From the NCBI GenBank assembly GCA_009103225.1, contig RHPI01000863.1, positions 63,892 to 120,801 of the forward strand: a stretch of 56,910 nucleotides of DNA, read 5' to 3'. The position numbers were made by a program, and so were the translations under genes. The stretch comes from Chlorokybus atmophyticus. Lineage: Eukaryota > Plantae > Mesostigma and Chlorokybus algae. The notes beneath the pieces were generated by a model, which was given only the letters and a program-made list of their open reading frames with translations, searched no databases and was not told the origin of the DNA. Below, piece by piece: positions 34 through 53,582 of this stretch (its first letter is position 1; each line of letters opens with the position of its first letter).

Positions 34-3000
34 GTGTGGTCAGAGCATTCAGCAGAAGCACACTCTTTGCTTGTGTTGAACAGCAAACCGCATCACTTTC
101 CCATGCTCACTGCATGTGAAGATGGTAGACAAGCTTGGGAAAAGCTATCAGCCGTTTTCAGAGCCAAGAACAATGCCAGAAAGTTGCATCTACGCAAGCA
201 GCTCAGCGCACTCAGGAAGGAGGCAGCAGAACCCATCACAAAGTATGTTGCGCGCGCGAGAGAGCTGTGGGCGGACCTCATCAACGTCGGCCACAACATG
301 GGGGAGACGGAGGTAGTGCTGGCCATTGTTGCAGGGCTACCAGCAGACTACGAGGTCGTCGCAACCCTGCTGGAGACGTCATCATCGGAGTTGACGTTGG
401 ACGATGTGCTACTGAAGCTGCTCACCGTGGAGCATAGGGTTGTGAAGAAGGACGAGCAAGCGGATGCCGTCGTCTTCTACACCGGCAAGCACGCAAAGAA
501 GAGCAACCATGAAGAGAAGTACAAGGGCAACAAGCCAGGCAATTCTCGTCACAAAGACCTCACATGCCACTGGTGTGGTTGGAAGGGGCACATTGTGAAG
601 GACTGTAGGAAGAAACAACAGGGGCAACCTAGAGCAAGCACCAGCAACAGCGGCAACGAGCACCAACACAAGGAGAAACATGTCGCCTTCACTGCATCCA
701 GTTCGAGGGCGGGCACAGCTTTCTGGGTGGTGGACTCTGGCTGCGATCGTCATCTCACACCAAACAAGGAGGTGATGGAGGGCTACAGGAAGCTGACGTC
801 CACAATCAAGGTGGCGGGCTTCGGTGGCGAAGTACTGGTGGCTGAGGGAGTTGGCGACGTACGACTCCAGTGCAAGGTTGGTAACACACTACGCGAGGTG
901 TTGTTACGCAACGTCCTGCATGTTCCTAAGGCTATTGCGAGTCTATTCTCTGTGAGGGTTGCGGAGCGCTTAGGCGCGGAGATCCTATTTCGGAAGGGTG
1001 GCTGCTCAGTCATCCTTGATGGGGTCGTGCACATGGTTGGAATCACTGATCCGGGAGGGCTCTACCACGTGGAGCAGCACCCTCAGGACATTGACATTCA
1101 AGCCATGATGGTGAAGGACAAGGAGTCGCCAACATTGTGGCATCGAAGGTTCGGGCATCTCAGCTACGTCAACCTCACTCGCCTTGTCATTAAGAAGATG
1201 GTCAAGGGCATCCATCTCAGCACAGAACTCAAGAATGCATCAGGTGCACTTTGTGAACCATGTCTGGTTGCAAAGCAGCATGCTATGCCATTCCCATCAT
1301 CCTCTTCGAGCAGTCAGCATCCTTGCGAGCTTGTGCACATGGATGTCTGTGGCCCTATGCGCATTGTGGCGAAGGGAGGGGCTAGGTACTTTGCTACGTT
1401 CCTCGACGACTACAGCAAGCTGCCCATCATCTTTCCATTGCCGCTCAAGTCAGAAGTTGCTGGAGCTGTGCGCACAGTCGTGGCCTTGTTGGAGACCCAG
1501 TCTGGCAACAAGATGAAGGCAATGAGGAGTGATCGAGGAGGGGAGTACATCAACAAGGAGTTGAAGGAGTTCTTCGCCAGCAAGGGCATACGCCACGAGA
1601 CAACGGCACCCTACACCCCGCAGCAGAATGGAGCAGCTGAACGCCTCAACAGGACACTCTTGGAGCGTGTTCGAGCCATGCTCAGCGACACAAAGATGGA
1701 AGACAGTTTGTGGAAGGAGGCGGTACTCACTGCCAACTACATCCGCAACAGGTCTCCGGTGAGCTCAGAGCAGAAGACTCCGTGGGAGCACTTCTATGGA
1801 GCCACACCAGATGTGAGTGGTATGCGTGTGTTTGGATGCACGGCATATGCACTAGTGCCTAAACAGCTCAGGCACAAGCTGGAGCCGGTCAGCAAGAAGG
1901 GCATCTTCGTTGGCTATGAACCGGGTTCCAAGGCTTACAGGATCTTGCTCGAGGACACTCAGAAGATCATTGTGAGCGGAGAGGTGGTTTTCCACGAGGG
2001 ATTATCACAACCAGAAGCAGGCTTCTTTCCTGAAGATGAAGCACAGCCGGAGCATCCTGAAACAGTGGAGGCTACAGGCAAGGCCATCATCGACGATAAG
2101 GGTGAGCAGGACTCCGTTGTAGCAGACAAGCAGTCGCACCTGCAGCAGGAGCACGCAGCTTGGAGATACCCAATGAGGGAGAGAAAGGCACCTGACTTCT
2201 TACACAAGGCACACGTCGCCAGTGTGCACAATGAGGAGCCAAGCACCTACGAGGAGGCATTGTTAGCACCAGATGCGGAGCAATGGCAGCGTGCTATGGA
2301 CGAGGAGATTGCGTCACTCCATGCCAACAACACTTGGTCACTGGAGCAGTTACCGCAAGGAGTGAAGACCATTCCAGTGAAATGGGTCTTCAAGGTGAAG
2401 CGTGATGGTCAGGGCAACATTGAGCGCTACAAGGCAAGACTGGTGGCAAAGGGCTTCTTGCAGCAGGAAGGTGTGGACTTCAACGAAGTGTTTGCACCTG
2501 CAAGTAAGCATACCACCTTCCGTGCACTGCTAGCTGTGGTTGCCGCTGAGGACCTCAAGCTGCATCACCTGGATGTGAAGACTGCCTTCCTCTACGGAGA
2601 GCTGGAGGAGGAGATCTTCATCGAGCAACCACCTGGATATGAAGAAGGGGAGAGAGGCACAGCGTGCAAGCTGATCAAGGCACTATACGGGCTGCGACAG
2701 GCACCGCGTATGTGGCACATCAAGCTCAGCAAGGAGCTGGAGGCACTTGGCTTCACCGCATCCTCTGCAGACCCTGGGCTCTTCATCCATGCAGACAACA
2801 AGGTCTGGCTGCTCGTGTATGTGGATGATATAATCATCACCGCCTGGCAGGTGCACCACCTGCAGGAGACGAAACTTGCTCTACAGCAAGCATTCTCAGT
2901 TCGTGATCTTGGAGAGGCCAAGTGGTTCCTTGGCATGGTGATTGAGCGCGACAGGGCGGCTCGCACAATCAAGATTAGTCAGGAGCAGATGGTGAGAAGA

Positions 3001-3767
3001 CTCGTCACCAAGTTTGGGCTCACTGAAGCGAAGACCAAGACCACACCGTTGGCACTTGGCACTGCCCTCATCAAGGCAAAGGATGAGGAGGTACTCGACA
3101 AGGCTCAGTATCCATATGGTGAGCTGGTAGGCAGCATGCTCTATCTGGCAGTGTGCACACGTCCCGATGTTGCACATGCTGTGGGAGTACTTGCTCGCTA
3201 CATGTCTGCACCGAGCATGGAGCACTGGAGAGCAGCAAAGGGAGTACTACGCTATGTTGCTGGGAGCGCAACAGTTGGCATTAAGTTTGGGAGCGGGAGC
3301 ACTGAGTTGGAGGGCTACTGCGACTCGGACTTTGCTGGTGACCTCAACAGCAGGAGGTCCACTACAGGCTACGTCTTCAAGCTGAACGGAGGCGTGGTGA
3401 GCTGGAACAGCAGGCTGCAGCCAACAACAGCAGCATCTACATCAGAGGCTGAGTACATGGCAGCGGCAGCAGCAGTGGAGGAGGCACTCTGGCTTCGCAA
3501 GCTCATGGCAGACTGGAGCACCCCATGGCGTGCATCGTCATCAACTGTGACAACCAAGGAGCCATCAAGTTGTTGAAGCACCCTATCGCCTCGGCAAGGA
3601 CGAAGCACATTGATGTTATGCATCACTTTGTGCGTGACAGAGTTACAAGGAAGGAGGTGGAGTTCCAGTACTGCAACACTGAGGGCATGCTGGCGGACTT
3701 CATGACAAAGCCATTGTCACCACTCAAGTTCAAGACCTGTTGTGCAGGACTTGGCATCTGTGTTTGA
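34..3767 (+). CDS. Copia gag-pol polyprotein, near intact, with one frameshift in RNase H at ~3530
   Basis: Zn knuckle CHWCGWKGHIVKDC; protease WVVDSGC; integrase HRRFGH...CEPC, VHMDVCG, RSDRGGEY, NGAAERLNRTL; RT YVDDII; RNase H YCDSDFAGD...STTGY...AEYMA, continuing in ORF 3525..3767 (CDNQGAI...RTKHIDV...LADFMTKPL). Confidence 0.95.
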
Positions 3768-33908: not shown

Positions 33909-36900
33909 TCAGACAATCTCTCCTGCGAGCGGCACGAACGGCGTCGTTGCGAGGCACGCCACATCCGCCTGCATGCTGAACTCCATATCAAAGGTCACAT
34001 AAGGCGGTCCGTTGCTCGCCTCGTGCACCTCCACAGCGAGTACTTGCGGCCCGTCCGCGCTCACGAGTCCCGCCGCGAGTGGGTACGTGTTGAAAGCCAG
34101 TCCATCCGTTGGCGCTAGTGCCATTGTGTTGTTGGAGATGGTGACCATGTTGTTGGGCATGTTGACACGCAGCGCCTCCACACCGTTCAGGTACATGATG
34201 AAGCCGTCGCGGGTGCGTATGTTGGCGAGGTAGGTGTGCGCGCAGTGCGTGGCGGACAGGGTGAACGTCTTTCTGAAATAGGCTGTGGTCAAGTGCATGC
34301 GTGCGATGACGGTTTGATCCGCAAAGGGAAGCTTGTTGTAGAAGCCGAGTGGGGAGCGGCCGGAGAGCCATGTTGTGTCGTCGTAGGCGGGAGAAGTCCA
34401 GGAAGAGTCGGGGGCGCCGTCGTCCTTGTAGTTCCAGGCGCTGTACGTCTTGAACACAGACAGAGGACCCGTGCTGGTGTGGGGAGATGTGTTAGTGCCT
34501 GCGTGCGTGCGTGTGCGCGTGCGTATGTGCGTGTGTGTGTGCGTGTGTGTACCTTTGGACGCAGAGTGGGTTGTTGCCGCACGGTGCTGCGATTGTGGCG
34601 GTAAGCGACGCCTCGTTCTCCAGATTGTTGTACTGGCTGACCTTGTGCACCTCCACGGCGAGTCGGTTCACTCCCCCGCGCAGGTTGAGCGGCGCCGCGG
34701 GGAGCGTCATGTTCACCAGCTTCGCGTAGTTGGAGTTGTAGGTGGGGTTGTTGAGGTTGGCCCACGTTGACACGCTCGGGGGCCCGGGCGGCATGTTGAG
34801 TCTAGCCAGCTCCACACCGTTGACCCACACAACCGCACCTTGTTGTGCCAGACTCTGCAGGTCAAGAGATGTGACGGCCGCAGCGGTGGCGTTGGAAGCC
34901 AACGTGAAGTCCACGACGAAGTAACCCGTCGGGGAGTACTGCCCGTTGAGTCTCACTTGTGCCATGAGTGTGTTGGCTGGGTAAGATGGTGCTGTGGATG
35001 TTGTGATGGGTGCGGGTCCAAGCGGCCACCCGTTGGCCGACGGCGTGAAGTTGCCGTTGGGACCACCCGGCGGGTTCTTCCAGTTGGGTACCTCCAGGTT
35101 GACGTGTCGGTAGTACCACGCGGGGTGTTGGAGTGGGATGATAGGGAGGGAGGTAGTGTTGGACAGCGCGCGACACGCCGCGAGGTAGCAAACGCTGCCC
35201 TGAGCGCAGTCCAGGTAGGTGCTGTTGCTGCTCGGGTCCGTGTTGGACGGCACATCAATACTACCATCACAATCGTTGTCCACACCGTCGCACACCTCGG
35301 GGTCCGCTTGCACATCGCAGGGGAGATACGCCCCGTTGACACACACTTGCACTCCCTGATGACAACCCGCTTGACACGTCAACGTGAGCGGGATGGTTGT
35401 GCCGGGCTGGTTGTCGATGTATCCATCATGGTCGTCATCCTTGCCGTTGCACACCTCCACAGCCCAATTGGCTAGTGGTACCAATGGTGGTGGTGGGATG
35501 GATGTACAGTTGGACAACTGGAACAACACGGCCACGCGGGTGGACGTGACGAGGCTTCCCGGGCGCACGATGAGGTTGGACACGCCCGTGTTGGGGTCCT
35601 CGGGGTACTTGGGTGAGAGAGCGAGAGGTGTTGGGTCAGATGTGACCACAGCAAAGGACGCATCGGCCGGTGAGAGGATAGTCCCAACCAAGGTGAGACC
35701 ATTTTGTGTGAGGCGGGCTGTTCTCCCGTCCAACGCCACGCTCACGGCGGCACGCGTGTGGAACATCGACACGACATCAACAGGGTTGGCGGCAGTAATC
35801 TCATCTTGCACGAGGAGTCTGCTACCTGACCCAACATCTTTGAGTAACATCACGCCACGAAGCACAGATACGGCATCGGGGTACGCCTCGGATAGGTCCG
35901 CGACAACGAGGGCACGCGTGGAGTTGGAGTAGGTTGTGATGATGGGTGTGTTGACTGCGGCGCCAATGTTGGATGGCTGGCTGTTGAAGTAGAGTGGCTG
36001 CTGCACCGCTCCCGCTTTGATCGCCAACGTGTTGTGTCCCTCGGAACGCACGCGGTAGAGTGTCCACCTCTTCGGTGCGAAGTAACCGGGCAGCAAGTAG
36101 TCGTCCGTGCCGAGGTCGATGAACCAGCGCACGCCGTTGGTCTCGAACATGAAAGAGCCCAAGTCCAGGTGCATGTGGCCGTTGCGGTTGGGACCCTGCC
36201 CGGCTTTCAGGAAGAGGTAACCGGCGCTGCCGTCCATCCAAGCGGAACGGTAAGAGATCGTGTCCACGCGGTAACCCTGGGAGAAGAGATGCACTCAGCG
36301 AGTGTGTGTGAGGGTTCTGATACTGACACAGTACCACAGCACCCACACGCACATACGCGCACGCACAAAGGACCATGTGTCTTTACCTGGTTTCTGCTGT
36401 CGAGTGGCGGGAACGCGCTCAGCGGCGGCGCCGCGGTGGTCCACTGCTGCCAGTTGGCACTCCCCAACCACAGCACTCTGTATATCCCTCCGGTCAACCC
36501 GAGCCTCCTCTCATTGGCCGCAAGGAAGGTGTCATTAAACTTCCTCGCAGCGTATATCGTCCAGTGAGATGAAATAGGGTCTTCGTGTGCGTCGGAGAAG
36601 CACGCGTTGGATCCCGAGGGGGCGATGGTGTATATGCGGGAGTAGGCGGCGGCGTACATGGCGGACCCATCGCCGAGGAGGCCGAAGTCCGTGCCGAGGG
36701 CGGACTCGATGGAGGTGAGGGAGAAGGCCATGTTCATGCCCGTGTTGGACATGTACGTCGTGCCCTCGTTCCAAGCGCCGGTGGGACTGTACATCTGCTT
36801 GCAACGCCAGATGGCCATCAAAGAACGACGAAGGATCTGCGCCAGATTGGGGTAACATAGTCAGTAACGACAACAACAACAATGATGACAACGCTGATAA

Positions 36901-38902
36901 TGATGACACACACACAGATGCACATGGGCGCGTGCGCACATACACACAAGCACACGACAACAGCAACACTTACATTCTCGCACAACACCGGGTCTCTTTC
37001 TGCGAACGCGACGGCTGCCATGACCCATCCGAACAGCGAGTTGATGGCAATGTTGTAGTCCAGCTGCGCGACGTAGTCCAGATTGTTCGCCGGGTAGTTG
37101 TCCGTGAGCAGCGATGGCAGGAACGCCTTGTTGAGAATAGAGTTCCACATGAGCGTCTTGTCGTCCTCAGTGAGGTAGTCGTTCATCCAGTCGTAGGCGA
37201 AGGCAAGGGCGGCCATGTAGTTGCCCATGCCCATGTAGCCGGGGTCGGGGATGCGGCCGGCGTTCCACGTGTCCGCGTCCAGGGAGCACACCAGGAGGAC
37301 GTCCAAACGGGCGGCGACGGCGAGGGAGGTGTCGTTGTTGAGGATGTAGGTGCCAGCCATCACAGCAACACGGTCCTACACATGTCACAGTATCAGATAC
37401 CATGCACACACACACACACATACACACGCACATCCACATGCACGCACACGCACACGCGCCCACCCACTCACCCACCCCAACCCCCACATACACATGCACT
37501 CATCACTGACCTGGAAGCTCCTTGCGGACGTGTCCGTTGTGCTGTTGACCGCCGCGCTGGCGTACGCCTGCGAGAAGGCCGACGAGCACCATCCCGGCAA
37601 CACCGAGGCCGTGGACCCCGTCCACGTGCACGCCGTCCTCAACACGGGCAACGTGTCCGTGTTGATCATCATGCGGGGGTGCGTCGGCCTCAACGTCACA
37701 AACAAGTTGGTATCGGGGATTGGGCTTGGGTCGTGCGCCAACTTGGGTGGGGGAGGAGGAGGAGGAGGAGGTGGCGGAGGTGGAGGAGGAGAAGGAGGAG
37801 GAGGGGACGGCTTGGGNGCCGTGGGGATAGCAGCGCGCGCAGCAGCGAGGTCCGCCTCAAGAGCCTCGCGCTCCTACACACAAGACAACCGGGGCGTGTG
37901 CATATCAACACACACACACACACACATACACGCGGCTGGATGGATGCTTACGCATGCTATCCTCACCCACCTGTGCCCATTGATGAGACACGCGCTCGGC
38001 GTCCTGAGCGAGGTTGTCCGCCTGATTTCTCAAAGCACTCCGAGTGTTCTCCTGTACGCATTGTTGATGAACACTGTAACATGCACACTAACATGTGTGC
38101 ATGTGCGTGTACTGATGAAAGTCACACATGTGGTGCATCTGCATGCGTGCGCGTGTGCACACGCGCACGCACGCACGCGCTGTCTTGCCTGTAACTCCAG
38201 CAAACGCTGCCGCAGCGCATCGGCAATCATCTCCGCCGCGTTGACCCTTTGCTGCATCTCTGCCTTCAGGGAGGCAAAGGAGGTGGGGGTGGGGAGGAGG
38301 GAGGAGGGGGAGGCTGGTTGCACACGGCGGGGAGGGCACCCGTAGGAGTGTAGCACTGGTCGGGACCGCGCCATGTCGGGTAGGCTATGTAGGACAGCTG
38401 CGTTCACACACACACACACACATGCAAACGTCAGCACACAGGCCAGATGTGAGAGAGATCTGCGTGCATGGTCTGCATGTGCAGGTACCGGAGGTATGAC
38501 GTAGTCCCTGCTGCACGGCGTGACGCCCAAGTACGTGGCGCACGTCTGGCCGACCGCCTTTGCAGTTATCGTCACATTGCACCCCGCGAGTGTGGCATTA
38601 CTCGCTTGCGCGCTCTGTATGGACGACACGGCCGCGGACCACAACCCGTTGGCATCGGTCTTTGGCGACTTCAGCGCGAGTTGTGCCCCCGTCATGTCGG
38701 TGCACAACACCTTCATGGACACGTTGGCGAGGGGGAAGCACTGGGGGCTGAAACCGCCGTCGCGGCAGGCGTCGCAGATGACGCGGCCCGTCACGAGGAT
38801 GGTGTTGGACTGCGAGGACACGGGACGGGAGAGGAGGGAGAGGGAGAGGAAGAAGAAGAGGGGGAGGAAGAGGGAGGGGGAGGGGAGGCGGATGGGAGCC
38901 AT
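33909..38902 (-). CDS. Secreted multidomain protein (~1330 aa): signal peptide, Pollen Ole e 1-like domain, Pro-rich linker, heparinase II/III-like polysaccharide lyase, two MopE-type metal-binding repeats, two galactose-binding-like beta-sandwich domains
   Basis: Six exons: 38902-38489, 38397-37511 (interrupted by a 450-bp insert), 37375-36974, 36836-36387, 36276-34553, 34473-33909; GT-AG junctions keep the frame. Motifs VTGRVICDAC...TDANG...C; LAFAYDW; WNEGTTY; GHMHLDLGSF...DLGTDDY.LPGYF...RWTLYRVRSEGHNTL; EVCNGKDDDHDGYID and EVCDGVDNDCDGSID; YFRKTF...YLNGVE..RVNMP...LAVEVH. Confidence 0.88.
37818..38267. repeat. 450-bp exact copy of 44954-45403
   Basis: Appears identical including the (CA)9 run; abuts an N at 37817. 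Confidence 0.92.
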
Positions 38903-41915: not shown

Positions 41916-44900
41916 TCAACCGAAGCACCCGCAGCGCGTCTTGCGCTGCGTACACATCAACACAACATGAGCAATGTGAATGTTGTGCGTACTGACGTGC
42001 ACATTTACACATCCGCATCTGCATACGCGCGTGCACACACATACGTACAGTACAGTAACAGGCACATATGCACGCACGCACAAGCGTGTTCTCACCACAG
42101 GGTAGTGTTTAAGCGTGAGGGAATTTCTGGCTCGGAGCTCTTCATCTGCCCATCTGACAGTCTTGCTGAGTGTGGCTTTCATGACAAAGGAGGAGCCCGC
42201 GATGGTGTTGGTGCTGCCGGCCGGAGCCGTGTTGGTGTTGACTCCCTCTCCCTTTGCCATGTCCGCTATCCTCTGGTCCATCCGCTGAGCCCACTCCAAA
42301 TCAGCCTGGCGTGGTGATGTCACAGAAGAGTGAGTGAGTGAGTGTTTCCCTCCTGTCAAAAGTGCTGTGCTTCGCGCGTGGGCATGTGTGCGTGCGTCCA
42401 CATACGCGTGCACGCATGCTTTCATGTGGTCCTGTCTCTACCTGTTGCTTCAGTGCTTTCACTTTATCCAGGTCGATGAGTCCCCACCGGCCGCTCTTCC
42501 GTCTGGGCGGGTCCTTCTTCGACGAGTCCGCGTGGCCGAACAAACGCCATTTGGGCGAAGGCGGGGACACTTCTTGACCGGTCGCATAAGCAGCAAGGCT
42601 TCGCGCTGCCTGATCAGACAGAAGACACAGAACACAGAGAACGCGCGCTCACTACAAAGGTACACTCACACCCAAGCAAAGTACTCGTTCAAACTTGAGA
42701 CAAGACTCCATATACGCGCACACAGACCAGTATGAGGATACATAAGTAGAGGACGACTTTTTGTAGTAGTACACATGCACGAAATGCAGGCTTAGTCCTG
42801 AGATAAATGTTCATGACTGACCTGTTTTAGGACGTCTTGGTTGGAAAGAAGCGAGCTCAGCTTTTTCTGCGTGGCCCCGAGGATGCTCGGGACTTGGCTC
42901 GACGAGTTGCTCGACAACCGCGAGGTGCGTCTGCTGTCGTTGGCACTGCTGCTGTTGTTGTTGTTGTTGACACTGTTTCTCCTGCTCATGCTTTTGAGAT
43001 TGGTGTTGTTTGTATGAAGTCCCCCCTCCTGGTTATAAGTTCCGGACACAGTCGGCAGAGTCCCGGACACGGATGATCGGCGACTGTTTCCCTGTTTAGG
43101 ACTGCCCGTGTTGATGCTGATGTTGTGCATGTTGTTCACGCTGTTGCGTCGGGAGCCGTAAGTGGAGGGCAGTTGCTGCTGCTGCTGTGGTTGGATTGAC
43201 ACGCTCCCTCTTCGCTGCTGGTTGGGACTCGTACTTGCGTTGTTGTTGTTCATGGATGTCTGCGTCACGCTGGCGCGGCGAGGTGAACCGGGGACTGGCG
43301 TGGACGCGCCCGAGTTGGACTTGTGTCTCCTCTGCTCATAGTCACCGCAAGCAAGTGCGTGTGTTTGTGCGTGTACGCATGTATGTGTACGCGAGAGCGA
43401 GTGAGTGTGTGGCGGTGAAGTGGGTGCAATGGGTGAGTCAGGGGACAAGTACCTGATCGGATGTGCTTGGCCTGCGTTCAACTGCTGGCAACTGAGCTGA
43501 TATAGACCTTCGGTTCTGCACATAGTTGACATCAGAATGCATGGTCACTCAAACCACCAACATACGCGCGCGCGCACACGCCTCTGACTTATCATTGTCA
43601 CTTCTGCTACTTACTGATTTGGCCACATTCTCCACTCGAGGATCCGTTGGCATCCCCGCTGCCCCGTGATCTTGTTGCTGTTGGCTGTACCCGCCGCCGT
43701 TCTGGCTCTGCTTGTGGGTGTGCGCGTACGCCTGCATCCCCGAGGGCGACGTCGGCGAAGACGGGGCAGAGGCGTGGTGGATATCGCCGCCGCCAGCGCG
43801 ATCATGCTCCTCCTCGGGCATGTGAGAAGAATATATCGCACCCGCGGGAGTGGATATCGCCGCCGAGTGCGCCAACGCTATCGCATGCTGGGCCCTCTGC
43901 GAGATGACACGTGTGTGTGCGTGTGTGCATGCGTGCGGGCGCGCGTGTGTGTGTGCGTGTATACCTTGGCGAGGTTGATGGTGTCTCTGTGGCTGTTTTG
44001 GGCGATGGCGGCCTCGACCAGGCCGTCGGCAACCTCGAGGTGGGCCTGCACGGCGGCGAGGATACGGGACGCCTCCGCCCACACAACCGTGGAAGAAGCT
44101 CTCATCAACACCTGCGTGAGGCCGCCATTGGTGATGCGTGCGCGTAAATCAGATGCACACCAACACACCTGCACACATGTTTCAGCAACACACGCACACC
44201 ACCGTGCGGGCAGGTGTGCACGCTCATGCGCGCATGCACACACGCGCGCGCAGGTGCCTCACCGCTGATGGGTCTTCTGCGTATGATGTGGAGGTAGGGG
44301 ACGTCGGAGGGAGCAGATCGTTGTGTTGCTGCTGTGGGTGCTGTGGTTGTTGATGGTGCTGTTGGTATAGTGTCGGCAAGGGCTCGGGACCAGGAGGGAA
44401 GGAGGAGGTGTGGCGCAAGACAGACTGAAGCTGCTGCTGCAGTGAGCCCACCTCCACAAGAGCCTAATAACGAAGCATTAACTGTACTGTGTTGGTTGCG
44501 CACGCACGCACGCACGCACGCACCACAGGCTCGCACCTGTCGTTCGTTTCGTCGTGCTTGTTCTAGGTCTGCCCACAGTCTCTCGCACTCTCTCGCTGCC
44601 TCCTGCGCTGCCACGCCGGCCTCCTTGCCCGCAGACACCACGCGAGCCTCGCTCTCTGCGCGTGTGTGTGAGAGAGTGTGTTGGTGTTGGTGTCACACGC
44701 ATGCGGCTTCGCGTGGTGTGTGTATGAGCATACCTGCAATGGCGATGTCGGCCCGCTGCTCTGCCATGCGTGCGCGCTCCAACGCGTCCGCCTTCTCAGC
44801 CTATTGTTGCATTGATGTGTGCACATGCGTGCGCGTGCGTGCGCGAGTGCAAGCACTTGTGCATGCATGTGTGTGTGCACGTGTATGTGGGTTAGAATGA

Positions 44901-46182
44901 TAGGTGCTGCGCGTGAATCAATGCTTACTTGGGCTGCGAGGAGGGACTCTTCCGCCGTGGGGATAGCAGCGCGCGCAGCAGCGAGGTCCGCCTCAAGAGC
45001 CTCGCGCTCCTACACACAAGACAACCGGGGCGTGTGCATATCAACACACACACACACACACATACACGCGGCTGGATGGATGCTTACGCATGCTATCCTC
45101 ACCCACCTGTGCCCATTGATGAGACACGCGCTCGGCGTCCTGAGCGAGGTTGTCCGCCTGATTTCTCAAAGCACTCCGAGTGTTCTCCTGTACGCATTGT
45201 TGATGAACACTGTAACATGCACACTAACATGTGTGCATGTGCGTGTACTGATGAAAGTCACACATGTGGTGCATCTGCATGCGTGCGCGTGTGCACACGC
45301 GCACGCACGCACGCGCTGTCTTGCCTGTAACTCCAGCAAACGCTGCCGCAGCGCATCGGCAATCATCTCCGCCGCGTTGACCCTTTGCTGCATCTCTGCC
45401 TTCTCCTGTTGTCAGGACATCCACCACACTTACAACAATCAACAACAACAACAACAACAACAACCACATTTACGACGCCACAAGACAACAACAACGATGA
45501 CGTTAATGGTACTGACCTGGGAGCGTTTCTGCTGGAGGTCAGCGAGCATGAATAGCTGCTCTTCATACTGTTGCTGTAGGGCCGCCATCTGCTGCTGCAC
45601 GTCGCACAGTATGTTTCATAATTTGTGCATAAGAAGAAAGAAACAACATTATATTGTGTGTTTGATCGCGTGGAGTGCTGCTAGGTGATCACCTCAGGCT
45701 TACCAAAGTAAAGAGCGAAAGCTGCAGTGCGTGCACGTGCACGTGCACGTATTGCACTGTGTGCGGGCGTGCGTGTTTTTCGTGTAGATGTGTGTTGATT
45801 CGTGCGTGTGCCCTCAATCACTCAATTACTACGAAGAACTCCGATCGACCTGGTGTCCACAAGCTGCAACTCCCCCTTTTGATCTCTCACTCACCTGCAA
45901 GGCGATCTCACGCTCCTGCTGCAGCTGCTGCTGTGGTTGTGCGTGTGCGTGTGTGTGTTGTTGCTGCTGCTGCTGCTGTCCATCGTGCTGCTGAGGTGCA
46001 GGTGCAGGTGTTGCCAATGGTGTCGTCCAGGTCGTGGACGTCGACGGCTGCAGGCGAGGGTTGGATAGCAACGCGGATGACGCTGAGGCGGACGCCGAGA
46101 CATAGGAGGTGGATGCGGACGAGGAGGAGGAGGTCAGATATGGTGCACAGAGCGCCTCGAGCTCCGTAATCAACGGCTCCAT
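41916..46182 (-). CDS. Multi-exon Gln/Ser-rich coiled-coil protein of unknown function, ending RKTRCGCFG
   Basis: At least 12 exons between CA/GCAC-rich introns, e.g. MEPLITELEAL...EREIALQ, EKAEMQQRVNAAEMIADALRQRLLELQ, EREALEADLAAARAA, ESEARVVSAG...LEQARRNERQ, KTVRWADEE. Confidence 0.72.
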
Positions 46183-53320: not shown

Positions 53321-53535
53321 TGAGATGAGAGGACATGGCTGCCAGGTGGCATCTCTGTGTGAGTGAGAGAGATCTTGCAGCAACCCACTCGCTCTTTACT
53401 TGATCAGTTGGCTGCTGACGCGGCTGCTAGTTTAGCGGATGTTGCATGAAATTTTGCCCTGCTGCGGGTTTTTGCTTGTGATGAAAATAGTCTAATGTAC
53501 AGTGTAGTAGGGAAGGGGGGGGGGGGGGGGGGGTN

Positions 53536-53582
<47 letters not shown>

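What the first reader, a model, noticed from the sequence alone, without database searches (positions are those of the whole stretch)
33909..38902. Bacterial-type heparinase II/III lyase fused to plant/algal cell-wall modules
Seen: a eukaryotic front end (signal peptide, Ole e 1-like Cys domain, SPPPP extensin-like linker) is joined to an alpha-toroid plus beta-sandwich lyase retaining the WxEG..Y Tyr and the GHxHxDxGSF His. Established: the heparinase II/III fold occurs in CAZy PL12/15/17/21-type enzymes, mainly bacterial, acting on uronic-acid or sulfated polysaccharides. Inference: a horizontally acquired lyase domesticated with introns and tethered to the hydroxyproline-rich wall, perhaps remodelling the alga's own matrix or attacking foreign polysaccharide. 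I do not know of this architecture being described.
Basis: partly seen in the sequence, partly recalled or inferred. Interest (0 to 1): 0.75.

Follow-up and report, generated by a model that had tools for sequence, protein, structure and literature searches.

The report
Algal Ole-e-1 plus bacterial-type lyase gene
This alga has a nuclear, intron-containing gene for a secreted enzyme that joins a plant-type wall domain to a bacterial-type (PL35) sugar-chain lyase with every known catalytic residue intact, so it may cut the alga's own acidic, sulphated wall slime; the proline-rich "linker" is unresolved in this assembly.

Summary
The gene is real. It lies on the minus strand, ATG at 38902 and TGA at 33911-33909.

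- **Architecture:** signal peptide, Ole e 1 domain (Pfam above its cut-off), a PL35-type lyase split by three spliceosomal introns, a Cys-rich MopE-like unit and two galactose-binding-like beta-sandwiches.
- **Catalytic residues:** all seven residues shown by mutagenesis to matter in PL35 GAGase II are kept.
- **Origin:** the lyase domain forms one clade with five Chlorokybus atmophyticus paralogues. That clade is nested among soil and freshwater bacterial sequences, which supports an old bacterial acquisition followed by expansion.
- **Linker:** The two C-rich tracts flank a 450-bp block (37818-38267) that is 100% identical to part of a neighbouring coiled-coil gene (44954-45403). The block abuts one of only two Ns in the window. 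The tracts may be coding, with an assembly fault between them. Alternatively the whole stretch may be one intron.
- **Function:** lyase activity, its substrate and wall tethering are inferred, not shown.
- **Prior reports:** the scan found the same gene family before on other pieces of this genome (s1-186364, s1-194335, s1-171905, s1-171923, s1-179423 and others). I found no paper describing it.

This is a new variant of a known enzyme kind, of moderate to high interest.

The parts
38489..38902 (-). Exon 1: start codon, signal peptide, Ole e 1 domain (7 Cys)
   Evidence: Pfam Pollen_Ole_e_1 E 3.1e-8, above cut-off. 43% identical to paralogue P0121 residues 27-129. GT donor at 38488.
38326..38397 (-). 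Exon 2a: end of the Ole e 1 module (PTWRGPDQCYTP region)
   Evidence: 64% identical to P0121 residues 131-152, collinear with exon 1 without indel. Codon log-odds +0.48 in this frame.
38269..38325 (-). C-rich tract 1. It reads VCNQ then a Pro/Ser run in the exon 2a frame. It is either coding or the 5' part of an intron (GT at 38325).
   Evidence: CCN frame equals the upstream coding frame. A TGA at 38268-38266 is formed across the junction with the duplicated block.
37818..38267 (-). 450-bp block 100% identical to 44954-45403. It holds three coiled-coil exon pieces and two introns of the neighbouring gene.
   Evidence: blastn 450/450 identical, and the only repeat of at least 150 bp at 97% or more in the window. 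The block abuts N at 37817.
37736..37817 (-). N (37817) and C-rich tract 2. It reads PKPSPPPPSPPPP... in the frame of the lyase exon, or it is the polypyrimidine end of an intron with AG at 37737-37736.
   Evidence: Non-C bases sit 20:3:1 at codon positions 3:1:2 in the flanking frame. There are only two Ns in the window.
37511..37735 (-). Start of the lyase domain (TLRPTHPR... entry motif and the TS.R substrate-groove region)
   Evidence: Aligns with the N-terminus of the mature bacterial homologues and with P0121 from residue 156. Codon log-odds +0.57.
36974..37375 (-). Exon: first half of the alpha/alpha toroid, with the neutraliser Asn at 37054-37052
   Evidence: DUF4962 E 0.004. 9o3q PL35 chondroitinase E 0.0034. 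The Asn column is nearly invariant in alignment A1.
36387..36836 (-). Exon: second half of the toroid, with the catalytic Tyr at 36755-36753
   Evidence: 8khv E 0.002, with Tyr aligned to Tyr246 of GAGase II. 61% identical to P0121 residues 362-510.
35452..36276 (-). Exon 7, first part: beta-sheet domain of the lyase. Catalytic His at 36177-36175; metal ligands His 36171-36169, Asp 36165-36163, Asp 36117-36115, His 36036-36034.
   Evidence: Hepar_II_III_C E 1.1e-14. 9o3q E 2.3e-17 and 8khv E 6e-13. Residue mapping.
35167..35451 (-). Exon 7, middle: Cys-rich unit with two MopE-like C.G.D(D/N)DCDG motifs (10 Cys)
   Evidence: Pfam Cu-binding_MopE E 1.1e-5, 26.0 bits, just under the cut-off of 27. 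The same unit occurs in up to 57 copies in large bacterial proteins and in Closterium proteins.
34553..35166 (-). Exon 7, end: beta-sandwich 1 (galactose-binding-domain-like)
   Evidence: Pfam BetaGal_ABD2 E 2.5e-5, 25.4 bits, above the cut-off of 23. Homologous to beta-sandwich 2 and to repeats in P0181, P0148 and P0221.
33909..34473 (-). Exon 8: beta-sandwich 2 and the stop codon
   Evidence: 60% identical to P0121 residues 1023-1225. AlphaFold model (pLDDT 62) matches the N-terminal sugar-binding domain of GH2 enzymes, TM about 0.5. Relatives occur in bacterial CotH/LTD proteins.
44954..45403 (-). Second copy of the 450-bp block, inside a multi-exon coiled-coil gene where its exons continue on both sides
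   Evidence: Sequence reading with flanking exons and GT..AG borders. 100% identity to 37818-38267.

Best explanation
This is a real nuclear gene of a Chlorokybus-lineage alga. It encodes a secreted mosaic enzyme of about 1,280-1,380 residues, depending on how the linker is read.

Order of modules:
- signal peptide
- plant-type Ole e 1 (PAC-like) disulphide domain
- possibly a Pro/Ser-rich stalk
- PL35-type polysaccharide lyase (alpha/alpha toroid plus beta-sheet domain)
- Cys-rich MopE-like unit
- two galactose-binding-like beta-sandwiches

The lyase core came from bacteria. It then gained introns and multiplied into a family of at least six genes, several of them fused to Ole e 1.

Inferred mechanism: beta-elimination at a 4-linked uronic acid. 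Asn neutralises the carboxylate. His and Tyr act as base and acid. A His/His/Asp/Asp metal site shapes the binding loop, as in PL35 GAGase II. The flanking modules would hold the enzyme on a polysaccharide matrix.

The most likely substrate is the alga's own anionic, sulphated, GlcA-containing 'pseudo-pectin', so the enzyme's role would be matrix remodelling or turnover.

Shown here: gene structure outside the linker, domain identities, residue conservation, phylogenetic position. Inferred: secretion, activity, substrate, tethering.
For: - **Gene model:** exon junctions E1/E2a, E4/E5, E5/E6, E6/E7 and E7/E8 are collinear, without indels, with the JGI protein P0121 (Chlat1/7377). Exons differ sharply from introns in TG/CA dinucleotide content (0.24-0.33 against 0.44-0.57) and in codon log-odds.
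- **Domains:**
- **PL35 membership:** the single exons hit only PL35 chains significantly. The family profile A1 hits 8khv at 8.7e-158, 8khw at 3.8e-147 and 9o3q at 5e-123; PL15 comes next at 2e-35.
- **Catalytic residues:** the equivalents of Asn192, Tyr246, His401, His403, Asp405, Asp421 and His457 of GAGase II are all kept. In GAGase II each of these was shown by mutagenesis to matter for activity (PMC12088678).
- **Origin:**
  - The best hits are Chlorokybus paralogues at 47-62% identity, then hundreds of bacterial proteins at 36-45%.
  - The Chlorokybus clade has support 91 and 94. With the environmental sequence P0004 the support is 95 and 98. It is nested among Myxococcales, Fibrobacteria, Hymenobacter and Acidobacteriaceae.
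- **Substrate lead:** Chlorokybus 'pectin' is sulphated and contains GlcA, including beta-D-GlcA-(1->4)-L-Gal. It resists all the land-plant wall hydrolases tried in that study (PMC10953000). Characterised PL35 enzymes cut GlcA-containing glycosaminoglycans.
Against: - There is no transcript or protein evidence for this locus. Its product is absent from the protein collections searched.
- The linker is broken in the assembly. One reading gives a premature TGA.
- Local motifs differ from the bacterial consensus: N-I in place of N-W-N after the neutraliser Asn, and T-T-Y-M in place of P-x-Y-W at the Tyr. Specificity, or even activity, could therefore differ.
- No characterised enzyme is closer than about 25-30% identity.
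- In an acidobacterial relative the homologue sits between AT3 acyltransferase genes. That hints at a role in polymer biosynthesis or editing rather than degradation.
- The root of the tree is not inferred.
Confidence: 0.6

Rival explanations
1. Same protein, different target. It attacks foreign polymers, such as bacterial exopolysaccharide or biofilm matrix, or other organisms' uronic-acid glycans. The purpose would be defence or nutrition rather than remodelling the alga's own matrix.
For: The donor-side relatives belong to soil and freshwater heterotrophs: Acidobacteriota, Verrucomicrobiota, Planctomycetota and Myxococcota. The family is expanded to at least six genes, as is often seen for enzymes facing diverse outside substrates. 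Chlorokybus is a terrestrial or subaerial alga living among such bacteria (my own knowledge).
Against: The Ole e 1/PAC-type module is known from proteins of the plant's own wall (my own knowledge). A fitting endogenous GlcA-rich sulphated polymer exists. Nothing here discriminates between the two readings.
Confidence: 0.2
2. The catalytic core works as a uronate C5-epimerase, or another non-degradative editor, of the alga's polysaccharide. It would use the same proton-abstraction machinery without breaking the chain.
For: The lyase fold and its His/Tyr machinery are shared with dermatan-sulphate epimerase, which the family profile detects (6hzn, E 2.9e-6). An acidobacterial homologue lies between polysaccharide acyltransferase genes. 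The motifs around the Asn and Tyr are altered in the whole Chlorokybus clade.
Against: Similarity to proven lyases of PL35 is more than 100 orders of magnitude stronger than to the epimerase. All lyase-critical residues, including the proton-donating Tyr, are kept.
Confidence: 0.1
3. The locus is a very recently disabled copy. A real 450-bp segmental insertion from the neighbouring coiled-coil gene landed in the Pro-rich exon and creates a TGA at its junction. Only an Ole e 1 stub of about 180 residues would then be made.
For: The block is 100% identical to 44954-45403, with no shared sequence at its 5' border that would explain a graph mis-join. In the frame that continues from the conserved exon 2a, the T at 38268 plus the block's GA make a stop.
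Against: The N lies exactly at the other border of the block. The only other N sits in a poly-G run, so Ns here mark assembly trouble in G/C-rich low-complexity DNA. An intron from 38325 to 37736 would remove the block harmlessly and give a product collinear with P0121. All other exons are intact, although a very recent event would leave them so in any case.
Confidence: 0.1

Closest known systems
PL35 glycosaminoglycan lyases (GAGase II 8KHV, GAGase VII 8KHW, PL35 chondroitinase 9O3Q)
   Same: Two-domain toroid plus beta-sheet layout. The Asn/Tyr/His triad and the His/His/Asp/His-type metal site are conserved. The family profile matches them end to end.
   Different: - Only about 25-30% identity.
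- Eukaryotic, with three introns in the domain.
- Extra N- and C-terminal modules.
- Altered residues next to the Asn and the Tyr.
- Substrate unknown.
- The nearest relatives are uncharacterised soil-bacterial proteins, not the Bacteroidota enzymes that were assayed.
Chlorokybus atmophyticus protein jgi/Chlat1/7377 (P0121, 1225 aa) and paralogues 62, 2860, 4579, 6903
   Same: P0121 has the same order of modules (signal peptide, Ole e 1, lyase, MopE-like, two beta-sandwiches). It is 43-62% identical exon by exon. P0130 also has the Ole e 1-like front end.
   Different: P0121 has no Pro-rich stretch and only about 37 residues of the Cys-rich unit (95 here). The other paralogues lack the C-terminal cassette. 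The window's own product is not in the protein sets searched.
Plant PAC/Ole e 1 chimeric wall proteins (for example AGP31-type proteins; from my own knowledge, not tested)
   Same: A secreted protein that pairs an Ole e 1-type Cys domain with a Pro-rich stretch. In plants this pairing mediates non-covalent binding to wall polysaccharides.
   Different: The plant proteins carry no enzyme. Here the Pro-rich part is unproven, and the partner is a bacterial-type lyase.
Bacterial multidomain lyases with the same beta-sandwich (Verrucomicrobia RME94134.1 = P0200; P0178)
   Same: A PL35-like lyase domain followed downstream by one or two copies of the same beta-sandwich domain.
   Different: The domains are separated by 400-600 other residues. 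There is no Ole e 1 and no MopE unit between them. These proteins sit in a different part of the lyase tree.
Closterium proteins GJP57087.1 and GJP57556.1 and a EukProt transcript (P0265)
   Same: They share the sandwich / MopE-like / sandwich / sandwich cassette at 31-33% identity.
   Different: They have no lyase domain, and their N-terminal parts have no Pfam match.

Membership tests
CAZy PL35 polysaccharide lyases | Significant sequence similarity to characterised PL35 members, stronger than to any other PL family | tested here: met
   Exon 7 against 9o3q, 8khv and 8khw: 2.3e-17, 6e-13 and 6e-10. Exons 5 and 6 hit only PL35 chains below 0.01. Family profile: 1e-123 to 1e-158 against PL35, 2e-35 against PL15. 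dbCAN itself was not available.
CAZy PL35 polysaccharide lyases | Catalytic triad Asn (neutraliser), Tyr and His, as in GAGase II Asn192/Tyr246/His401 | tested here: met
   Asn 37054-37052, Tyr 36755-36753, His 36177-36175. Residue roles from PMC12088678.
CAZy PL35 polysaccharide lyases | Metal (Mn2+) site: His403, Asp405, Asp421, His457 of GAGase II | tested here: met
   His 36171-36169, Asp 36165-36163, Asp 36117-36115 and His 36036-36034. All sit in invariant or nearly invariant columns of A1.
CAZy PL35 polysaccharide lyases | Beta-elimination activity on uronic-acid polysaccharides | not testable with these tools
   Needs expression and assay.
Pollen Ole e 1 / PAC domain family (PF01190) | Match to the family model above its curated cut-off | tested here: met
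   Exon 1: 34.3 bits against 23, E 3.1e-8, profile positions 1-89 of 99. Paralogue P0121: 28.7 bits.
Pollen Ole e 1 / PAC domain family (PF01190) | Conserved cysteines, including the G.V.CD.CR signature near the start | tested here: inconclusive
   The TGRVICDACR motif is present at 38791 onward, with 7 Cys in exon 1 and 1-2 in exon 2a. The comparison with the PROSITE signature is from memory, and the total Cys count depends on the unresolved splice.
Extensin-like hydroxyproline-rich linker | Translated Ser-Pro(3-5) repeats within the mature protein | tested here: inconclusive
   SPPPP motifs are in frame with the flanking exons in both C-rich tracts. They are interrupted by the duplicated block and an N. 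An alternative 38325-37736 intron removes them. No transcript data.
MopE-like putative metal-binding motif (PF11617) | Match to the family model above cut-off | tested here: inconclusive
   26.0 bits against 27, two stretches. Homology of the roughly 70-residue unit to bacterial multi-repeat proteins is strong (for example 18-57 stretches per protein, E down to 1e-157).
Galactose-binding-domain-like beta-sandwich | Family model match or fold match | tested here: met
   Copy 1: BetaGal_ABD2, 25.4 bits against 23. Copy 2: the model (pLDDT 62) matches GH2 N-terminal sugar-binding domains, Foldseek E about 1e-4, TM about 0.5. This is a moderate-confidence model.
Horizontally acquired bacterial gene in a eukaryote | Eukaryotic sequences form a narrow clade nested among bacterial ones; the gene is integrated (introns, eukaryotic flanks) | tested here: met
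   Trees. Three introns lie inside the domain. There is a copia retroelement and intron-bearing neighbours in the window. Caveats: the root is not inferred, only the best 150 of 6,624 library hits could be inspected, and the library carries no taxonomy.

The most novel reading that the evidence does not exclude
A relative of land plants took a glycosaminoglycan-lyase-type (PL35) enzyme from bacteria. It then fitted the enzyme with a plant wall-binding Ole e 1 module and sugar-binding sandwiches, and expanded it into a family. The family would serve as the endogenous depolymerase system for the alga's own sulphated GlcA/L-Gal 'pseudo-pectin'. That is a self-matrix turnover pathway with no counterpart in land plants. 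A further twist is that this copy may have just gained a coiled-coil stalk by in-frame exon shuffling from its neighbour.
Probability: 0.3. Interest if true: 0.75.

Novelty: new variant of a known kind. Interest (0 to 1): 0.6.

Why it matters
- **Enzyme candidate for an orphan polymer.** The wall of Chlorokybus, one of the deepest branches of the plant lineage, contains an anionic, sulphated, GlcA-rich polymer. No known plant-wall enzyme cuts it (PMC10953000). A secreted PL35-type lyase family with intact catalytic residues is a concrete candidate for the missing enzymes, and that can be tested with recombinant protein.
- **Gene transfer followed by module shuffling.** This is a clear case of bacterial gene acquisition followed by intron gain, duplication and shuffling with a plant-type wall module. 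It bears on how early streptophytes built and remodelled their extracellular matrix.
- **Assembly warning.** This locus shows a local assembly problem that would mislead automatic annotation.

Tried and rejected
- **Bacterial contamination or a chimeric contig:** rejected. GT..AG introns with the window's typical TG/CA-rich composition interrupt the lyase domain itself. The Ole e 1 exon is collinear with paralogue P0121. The flanks hold a copia element and intron-bearing genes.
- **A 'coiled-coil linker':** I first modelled three in-phase exons (38263-38177, 38051-37971, 37873 onward) as a genuine part of the protein, because their composition is exon-like. I dropped this as the default once they proved to be an exact copy of exons of the gene at about 45 kb.
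- **Finding the locus's own protein or transcript:** nothing turned up.
  - Word search with exon 7.
  - Word search with P0121, whole and C-terminal region.
  - Exact look-up of the exon 1 read-through ORF.
- **Retrieving DNA for the nearest non-Chlorokybus relatives P0004 and P0002:** the sample files were too large.
- **PDB sequence search with exon 8:** no significant hit.
- **Pfam on the read-through ORF of exon 1:** this missed Ole e 1. The exon alone gave it.
- **Joined spliced protein:** I did not build one for any search, fold or tree. Everything was done exon by exon by reference, so there is no full-length fold or full-length phylogeny.

Full report
**What is there.** The minus strand between 38902 and 33909 holds a multi-exon eukaryotic gene.

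Firm exons:

| Exon | Coordinates | Note |
|---|---|---|
| E1 | 38902-38489 | |
| E2a | 38397-38326 | |
| lyase entry | 37735-37511 | |
| toroid, first half | 37375-36974 | |
| toroid, second half | 36836-36387 | |
| E7 | 36276-34553 | ends in phase 2 |
| E8 | 34473-33909 | ends with TGA |

- All introns are GT..AG and 79-137 nt long.
- Introns are TG/CA-rich (dinucleotide fraction 0.44-0.57), against 0.24-0.33 in exons.
- Exons have GC3 of 0.74-0.91 and positive codon log-odds only in the proposed frame.
- Every firm junction is collinear, without indels, with the JGI protein model Chlat1/7377 of Chlorokybus atmophyticus (P0121, 1225 aa). P0121 is 43-62% identical exon by exon.

All searches, alignments, the fold and the trees used single exons by reference.

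**Domains.**
- **Ole e 1.** Exon 1 alone matches Pfam Pollen_Ole_e_1 above its cut-off (34.3 against 23 bits, E 3.1e-8). The hit comes after an N-terminus that looks like a signal peptide (by eye).
- **Lyase.** The exons from 37735 to about 35452 are a two-domain polysaccharide lyase.
  - Hepar_II_III_C scores 1.1e-14, and DUF4962 hits weakly.
  - The best solved relatives of each exon are PL35 chains only.
  - A profile of the family (alignment A1: this exon, four Chlorokybus paralogues, 29 bacterial homologues) matches the three PL35 structures end to end at E 1e-123 to 1e-158. PL15 follows at 2e-35 and dermatan-sulphate epimerase at 3e-6.
- **Catalytic and metal-site residues.** The structure paper on PL35 GAGase II shows by mutagenesis that Asn192, Tyr246, His401, His403, Asp405, Asp421 and His457 matter for activity (PMC12088678). 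All seven equivalents are present here.
- **Local differences.** The residues next to the Asn read N-I rather than N-W-N. Those around the Tyr read T-T-Y-M rather than P-x-Y-W. Both differences hold in all Chlorokybus paralogues.
- **C-terminal modules.** After the lyase come:
  - a Cys-rich unit of about 95 residues with two MopE-like motifs (26.0 bits, just under the cut-off of 27);
  - two homologous beta-sandwiches. The first passes the BetaGal_ABD2 cut-off. A moderate-confidence model of the second (pLDDT 62) resembles the sugar-binding N-domain of GH2 enzymes.

**The linker problem.** Between exon 2a and the lyase entry lie 590 nt (38325-37736).
- They consist of a C-rich tract, a 450-bp block (38267-37818), an N (37817) and a second C-rich tract.
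- The block is 100% identical to 44954-45403. It is the only long repeat in the window.
- At about 45 kb the same sequence is an ordinary part of a multi-exon coiled-coil gene whose exons continue on both sides.
- The window has only two Ns. The other one sits in a poly-G run, so Ns here mark trouble in G/C-rich low-complexity DNA.

Four readings remain:
1. **The tracts are coding.**
   - For: in both tracts the CCN frame is the frame of the adjoining conserved exon (1 in 9 by chance), and variation sits at third codon positions. A conserved Cys right after 38325 also aligns with P0121.
2. **The whole 590 nt is one intron** (140 nt without the block), with a strong polypyrimidine acceptor at 37736.
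   - For: no error has to be assumed. The product (about 1,283 aa) is collinear with P0121, and the Cys count is even.
3. **The insertion is real and disables the gene.** It creates a TGA at its junction (38268-38266).
4. **The insertion is real and spliced in frame.** A 62-nt mini-intron would add a coiled-coil stalk.

My rough weights are 0.45, 0.3, 0.1 and 0.1. The remainder is for something I have not thought of. Only transcripts or raw reads can decide.

**Relatives and origin.**
- The word search with the beta-sheet domain gave one Chlorokybus protein at 47% identity. It then gave hundreds of bacterial proteins at 38-45%, named as Acidobacteriota, Verrucomicrobiota, Armatimonadota or Chloroflexota where named at all.
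- The full library search gave 6,624 hits. The top hit was P0121, the only protein matching all three parts of the query.
- Look-ups identified five C. atmophyticus paralogues: Chlat1 7377, 62, 2860, 4579 and 6903.
- A scan of bacterial and archaeal genomes found relatives at 34-43% identity across many phyla.
- In an IQ-TREE tree of 103 sequences and a FastTree of 264:
  - the six Chlorokybus-lineage sequences form one clade (support 91 and 94);
  - an environmental sequence, P0004, is sister to it (95 and 98). Its 7.3-kb contig carries only short, scattered ORFs and so looks eukaryotic, but no DNA could be fetched;
  - the group is nested among sequences from Myxococcales, Fibrobacteria, Hymenobacter and Acidobacteriaceae.
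- The root is not inferred. With one narrow eukaryotic clade against more than a dozen bacterial phyla, transfer from bacteria is the economical reading.
- The genome's assignment to Chlorokybus comes from the scan's notes. My data agree, since all the closest relatives are C. atmophyticus proteins. This locus's own product is not in the protein sets searched.

**Origin of the accessory modules.**
- The Ole e 1 front end recurs in P0121 and, more weakly, in P0130.
- The MopE-like unit is a repeat of large bacterial proteins, with up to 57 copies per protein.
- The beta-sandwich occurs in bacterial CotH/LTD and cadherin-like surface proteins.
- It also occurs in two bacterial-type proteins that carry a PL35-like domain: P0200, annotated as a Verrucomicrobia MAG protein, and P0178, which carries no source name and groups with a Thermoguttaceae sequence in the tree.
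- The sandwich / MopE / sandwich / sandwich cassette is found in Closterium proteins and in one EukProt transcript, without a lyase.
- The gene is therefore a plant-bacterial mosaic, not a simple transfer.

**Function.** Shown: an intact catalytic and metal site of PL35 type in a protein with a secretory front end and sugar-binding-like modules.

Inferred: beta-elimination at a 4-linked uronic acid in the extracellular matrix.
- Chlorokybus 'pectin' is sulphated. It contains GlcA, with beta-D-GlcA-(1->4)-L-Gal as a characterised unit. It resists all the land-plant wall hydrolases tried in that study (PMC10953000).
- Characterised PL35 enzymes prefer GlcA-containing glycosaminoglycans. The alga's own matrix is therefore the most attractive substrate.

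Rivals:
- action on foreign, for example bacterial, exopolysaccharide;
- a non-degradative C5-epimerase-type role. This is hinted at by an acidobacterial homologue lying between polysaccharide acyltransferase genes, and by the distant kinship to dermatan-sulphate epimerase;
- recent inactivation of this particular copy.

**Novelty.**
- I found no paper linking Chlorokybus, or green algae in general, with heparinase-like or PL35 lyases.
- A recent review states that pectin lyases are absent from Mesostigma and Chlorokybus (PMC10762512).
- The scan itself has reported the same family on other pieces of this genome. This locus is thus a further paralogue.
- What is particular to this locus:
  - the possible Pro-rich stalk;
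  - the longer MopE-like unit;
  - the single 1.7-kb exon covering half the protein;
  - the duplicated block.
- I rate it a new variant of a known kind, with interest 0.6.

Noticed in passing
window 44600-45700, minus strand: A multi-exon gene for a Gln/Glu/Ala/Arg/Leu-rich coiled-coil-like protein. Its segment 44954-45403 is the source, or twin, of the 450-bp block inside the lyase gene. I did not identify the gene family.
   Followed up: partly
window 34-3576, plus strand: An uninterrupted 1180-aa Ty1/copia polyprotein ORF (gag, beta-barrel domain, integrase, RVT_2). It looks like a possibly recent, intact element.
   Followed up: partly
window 53500-53570: A long poly-G run holds the window's only other N (53535). 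Ns in this assembly seem to mark G/C-rich low-complexity trouble spots.
   Followed up: yes
P0004 (metagenome 3300059473, 7.3-kb contig): This is the nearest non-Chlorokybus relative of the lyase clade. It sits on a contig with sparse, short ORFs, one with a weak C-type lectin hit. That looks like intron-broken eukaryotic DNA, so a second, unsampled eukaryote may carry the family.
   Followed up: partly
P0148, P0221 (Closterium NIES-67/68) and P0265 (EukProt transcript): These proteins have a sandwich / MopE-like / sandwich / sandwich cassette like the C-terminus here, but no lyase. Their N-terminal halves have no Pfam match.
   Followed up: partly
L001:739-5910 (Acidobacteriaceae MAG): The bacterial homologue is flanked by an AT3 acyltransferase gene and an AT3-SGNH acyltransferase gene. 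This suggests an exopolysaccharide biosynthesis or editing locus rather than a catabolic one.
   Followed up: partly
window 34553-36276: Half of the protein (574 codons) is in one exon. The scan's notes describe paralogues with 16-17 exons. Intron number may differ strongly among paralogues. I did not check this because I hold no paralogue DNA.
   Followed up: no
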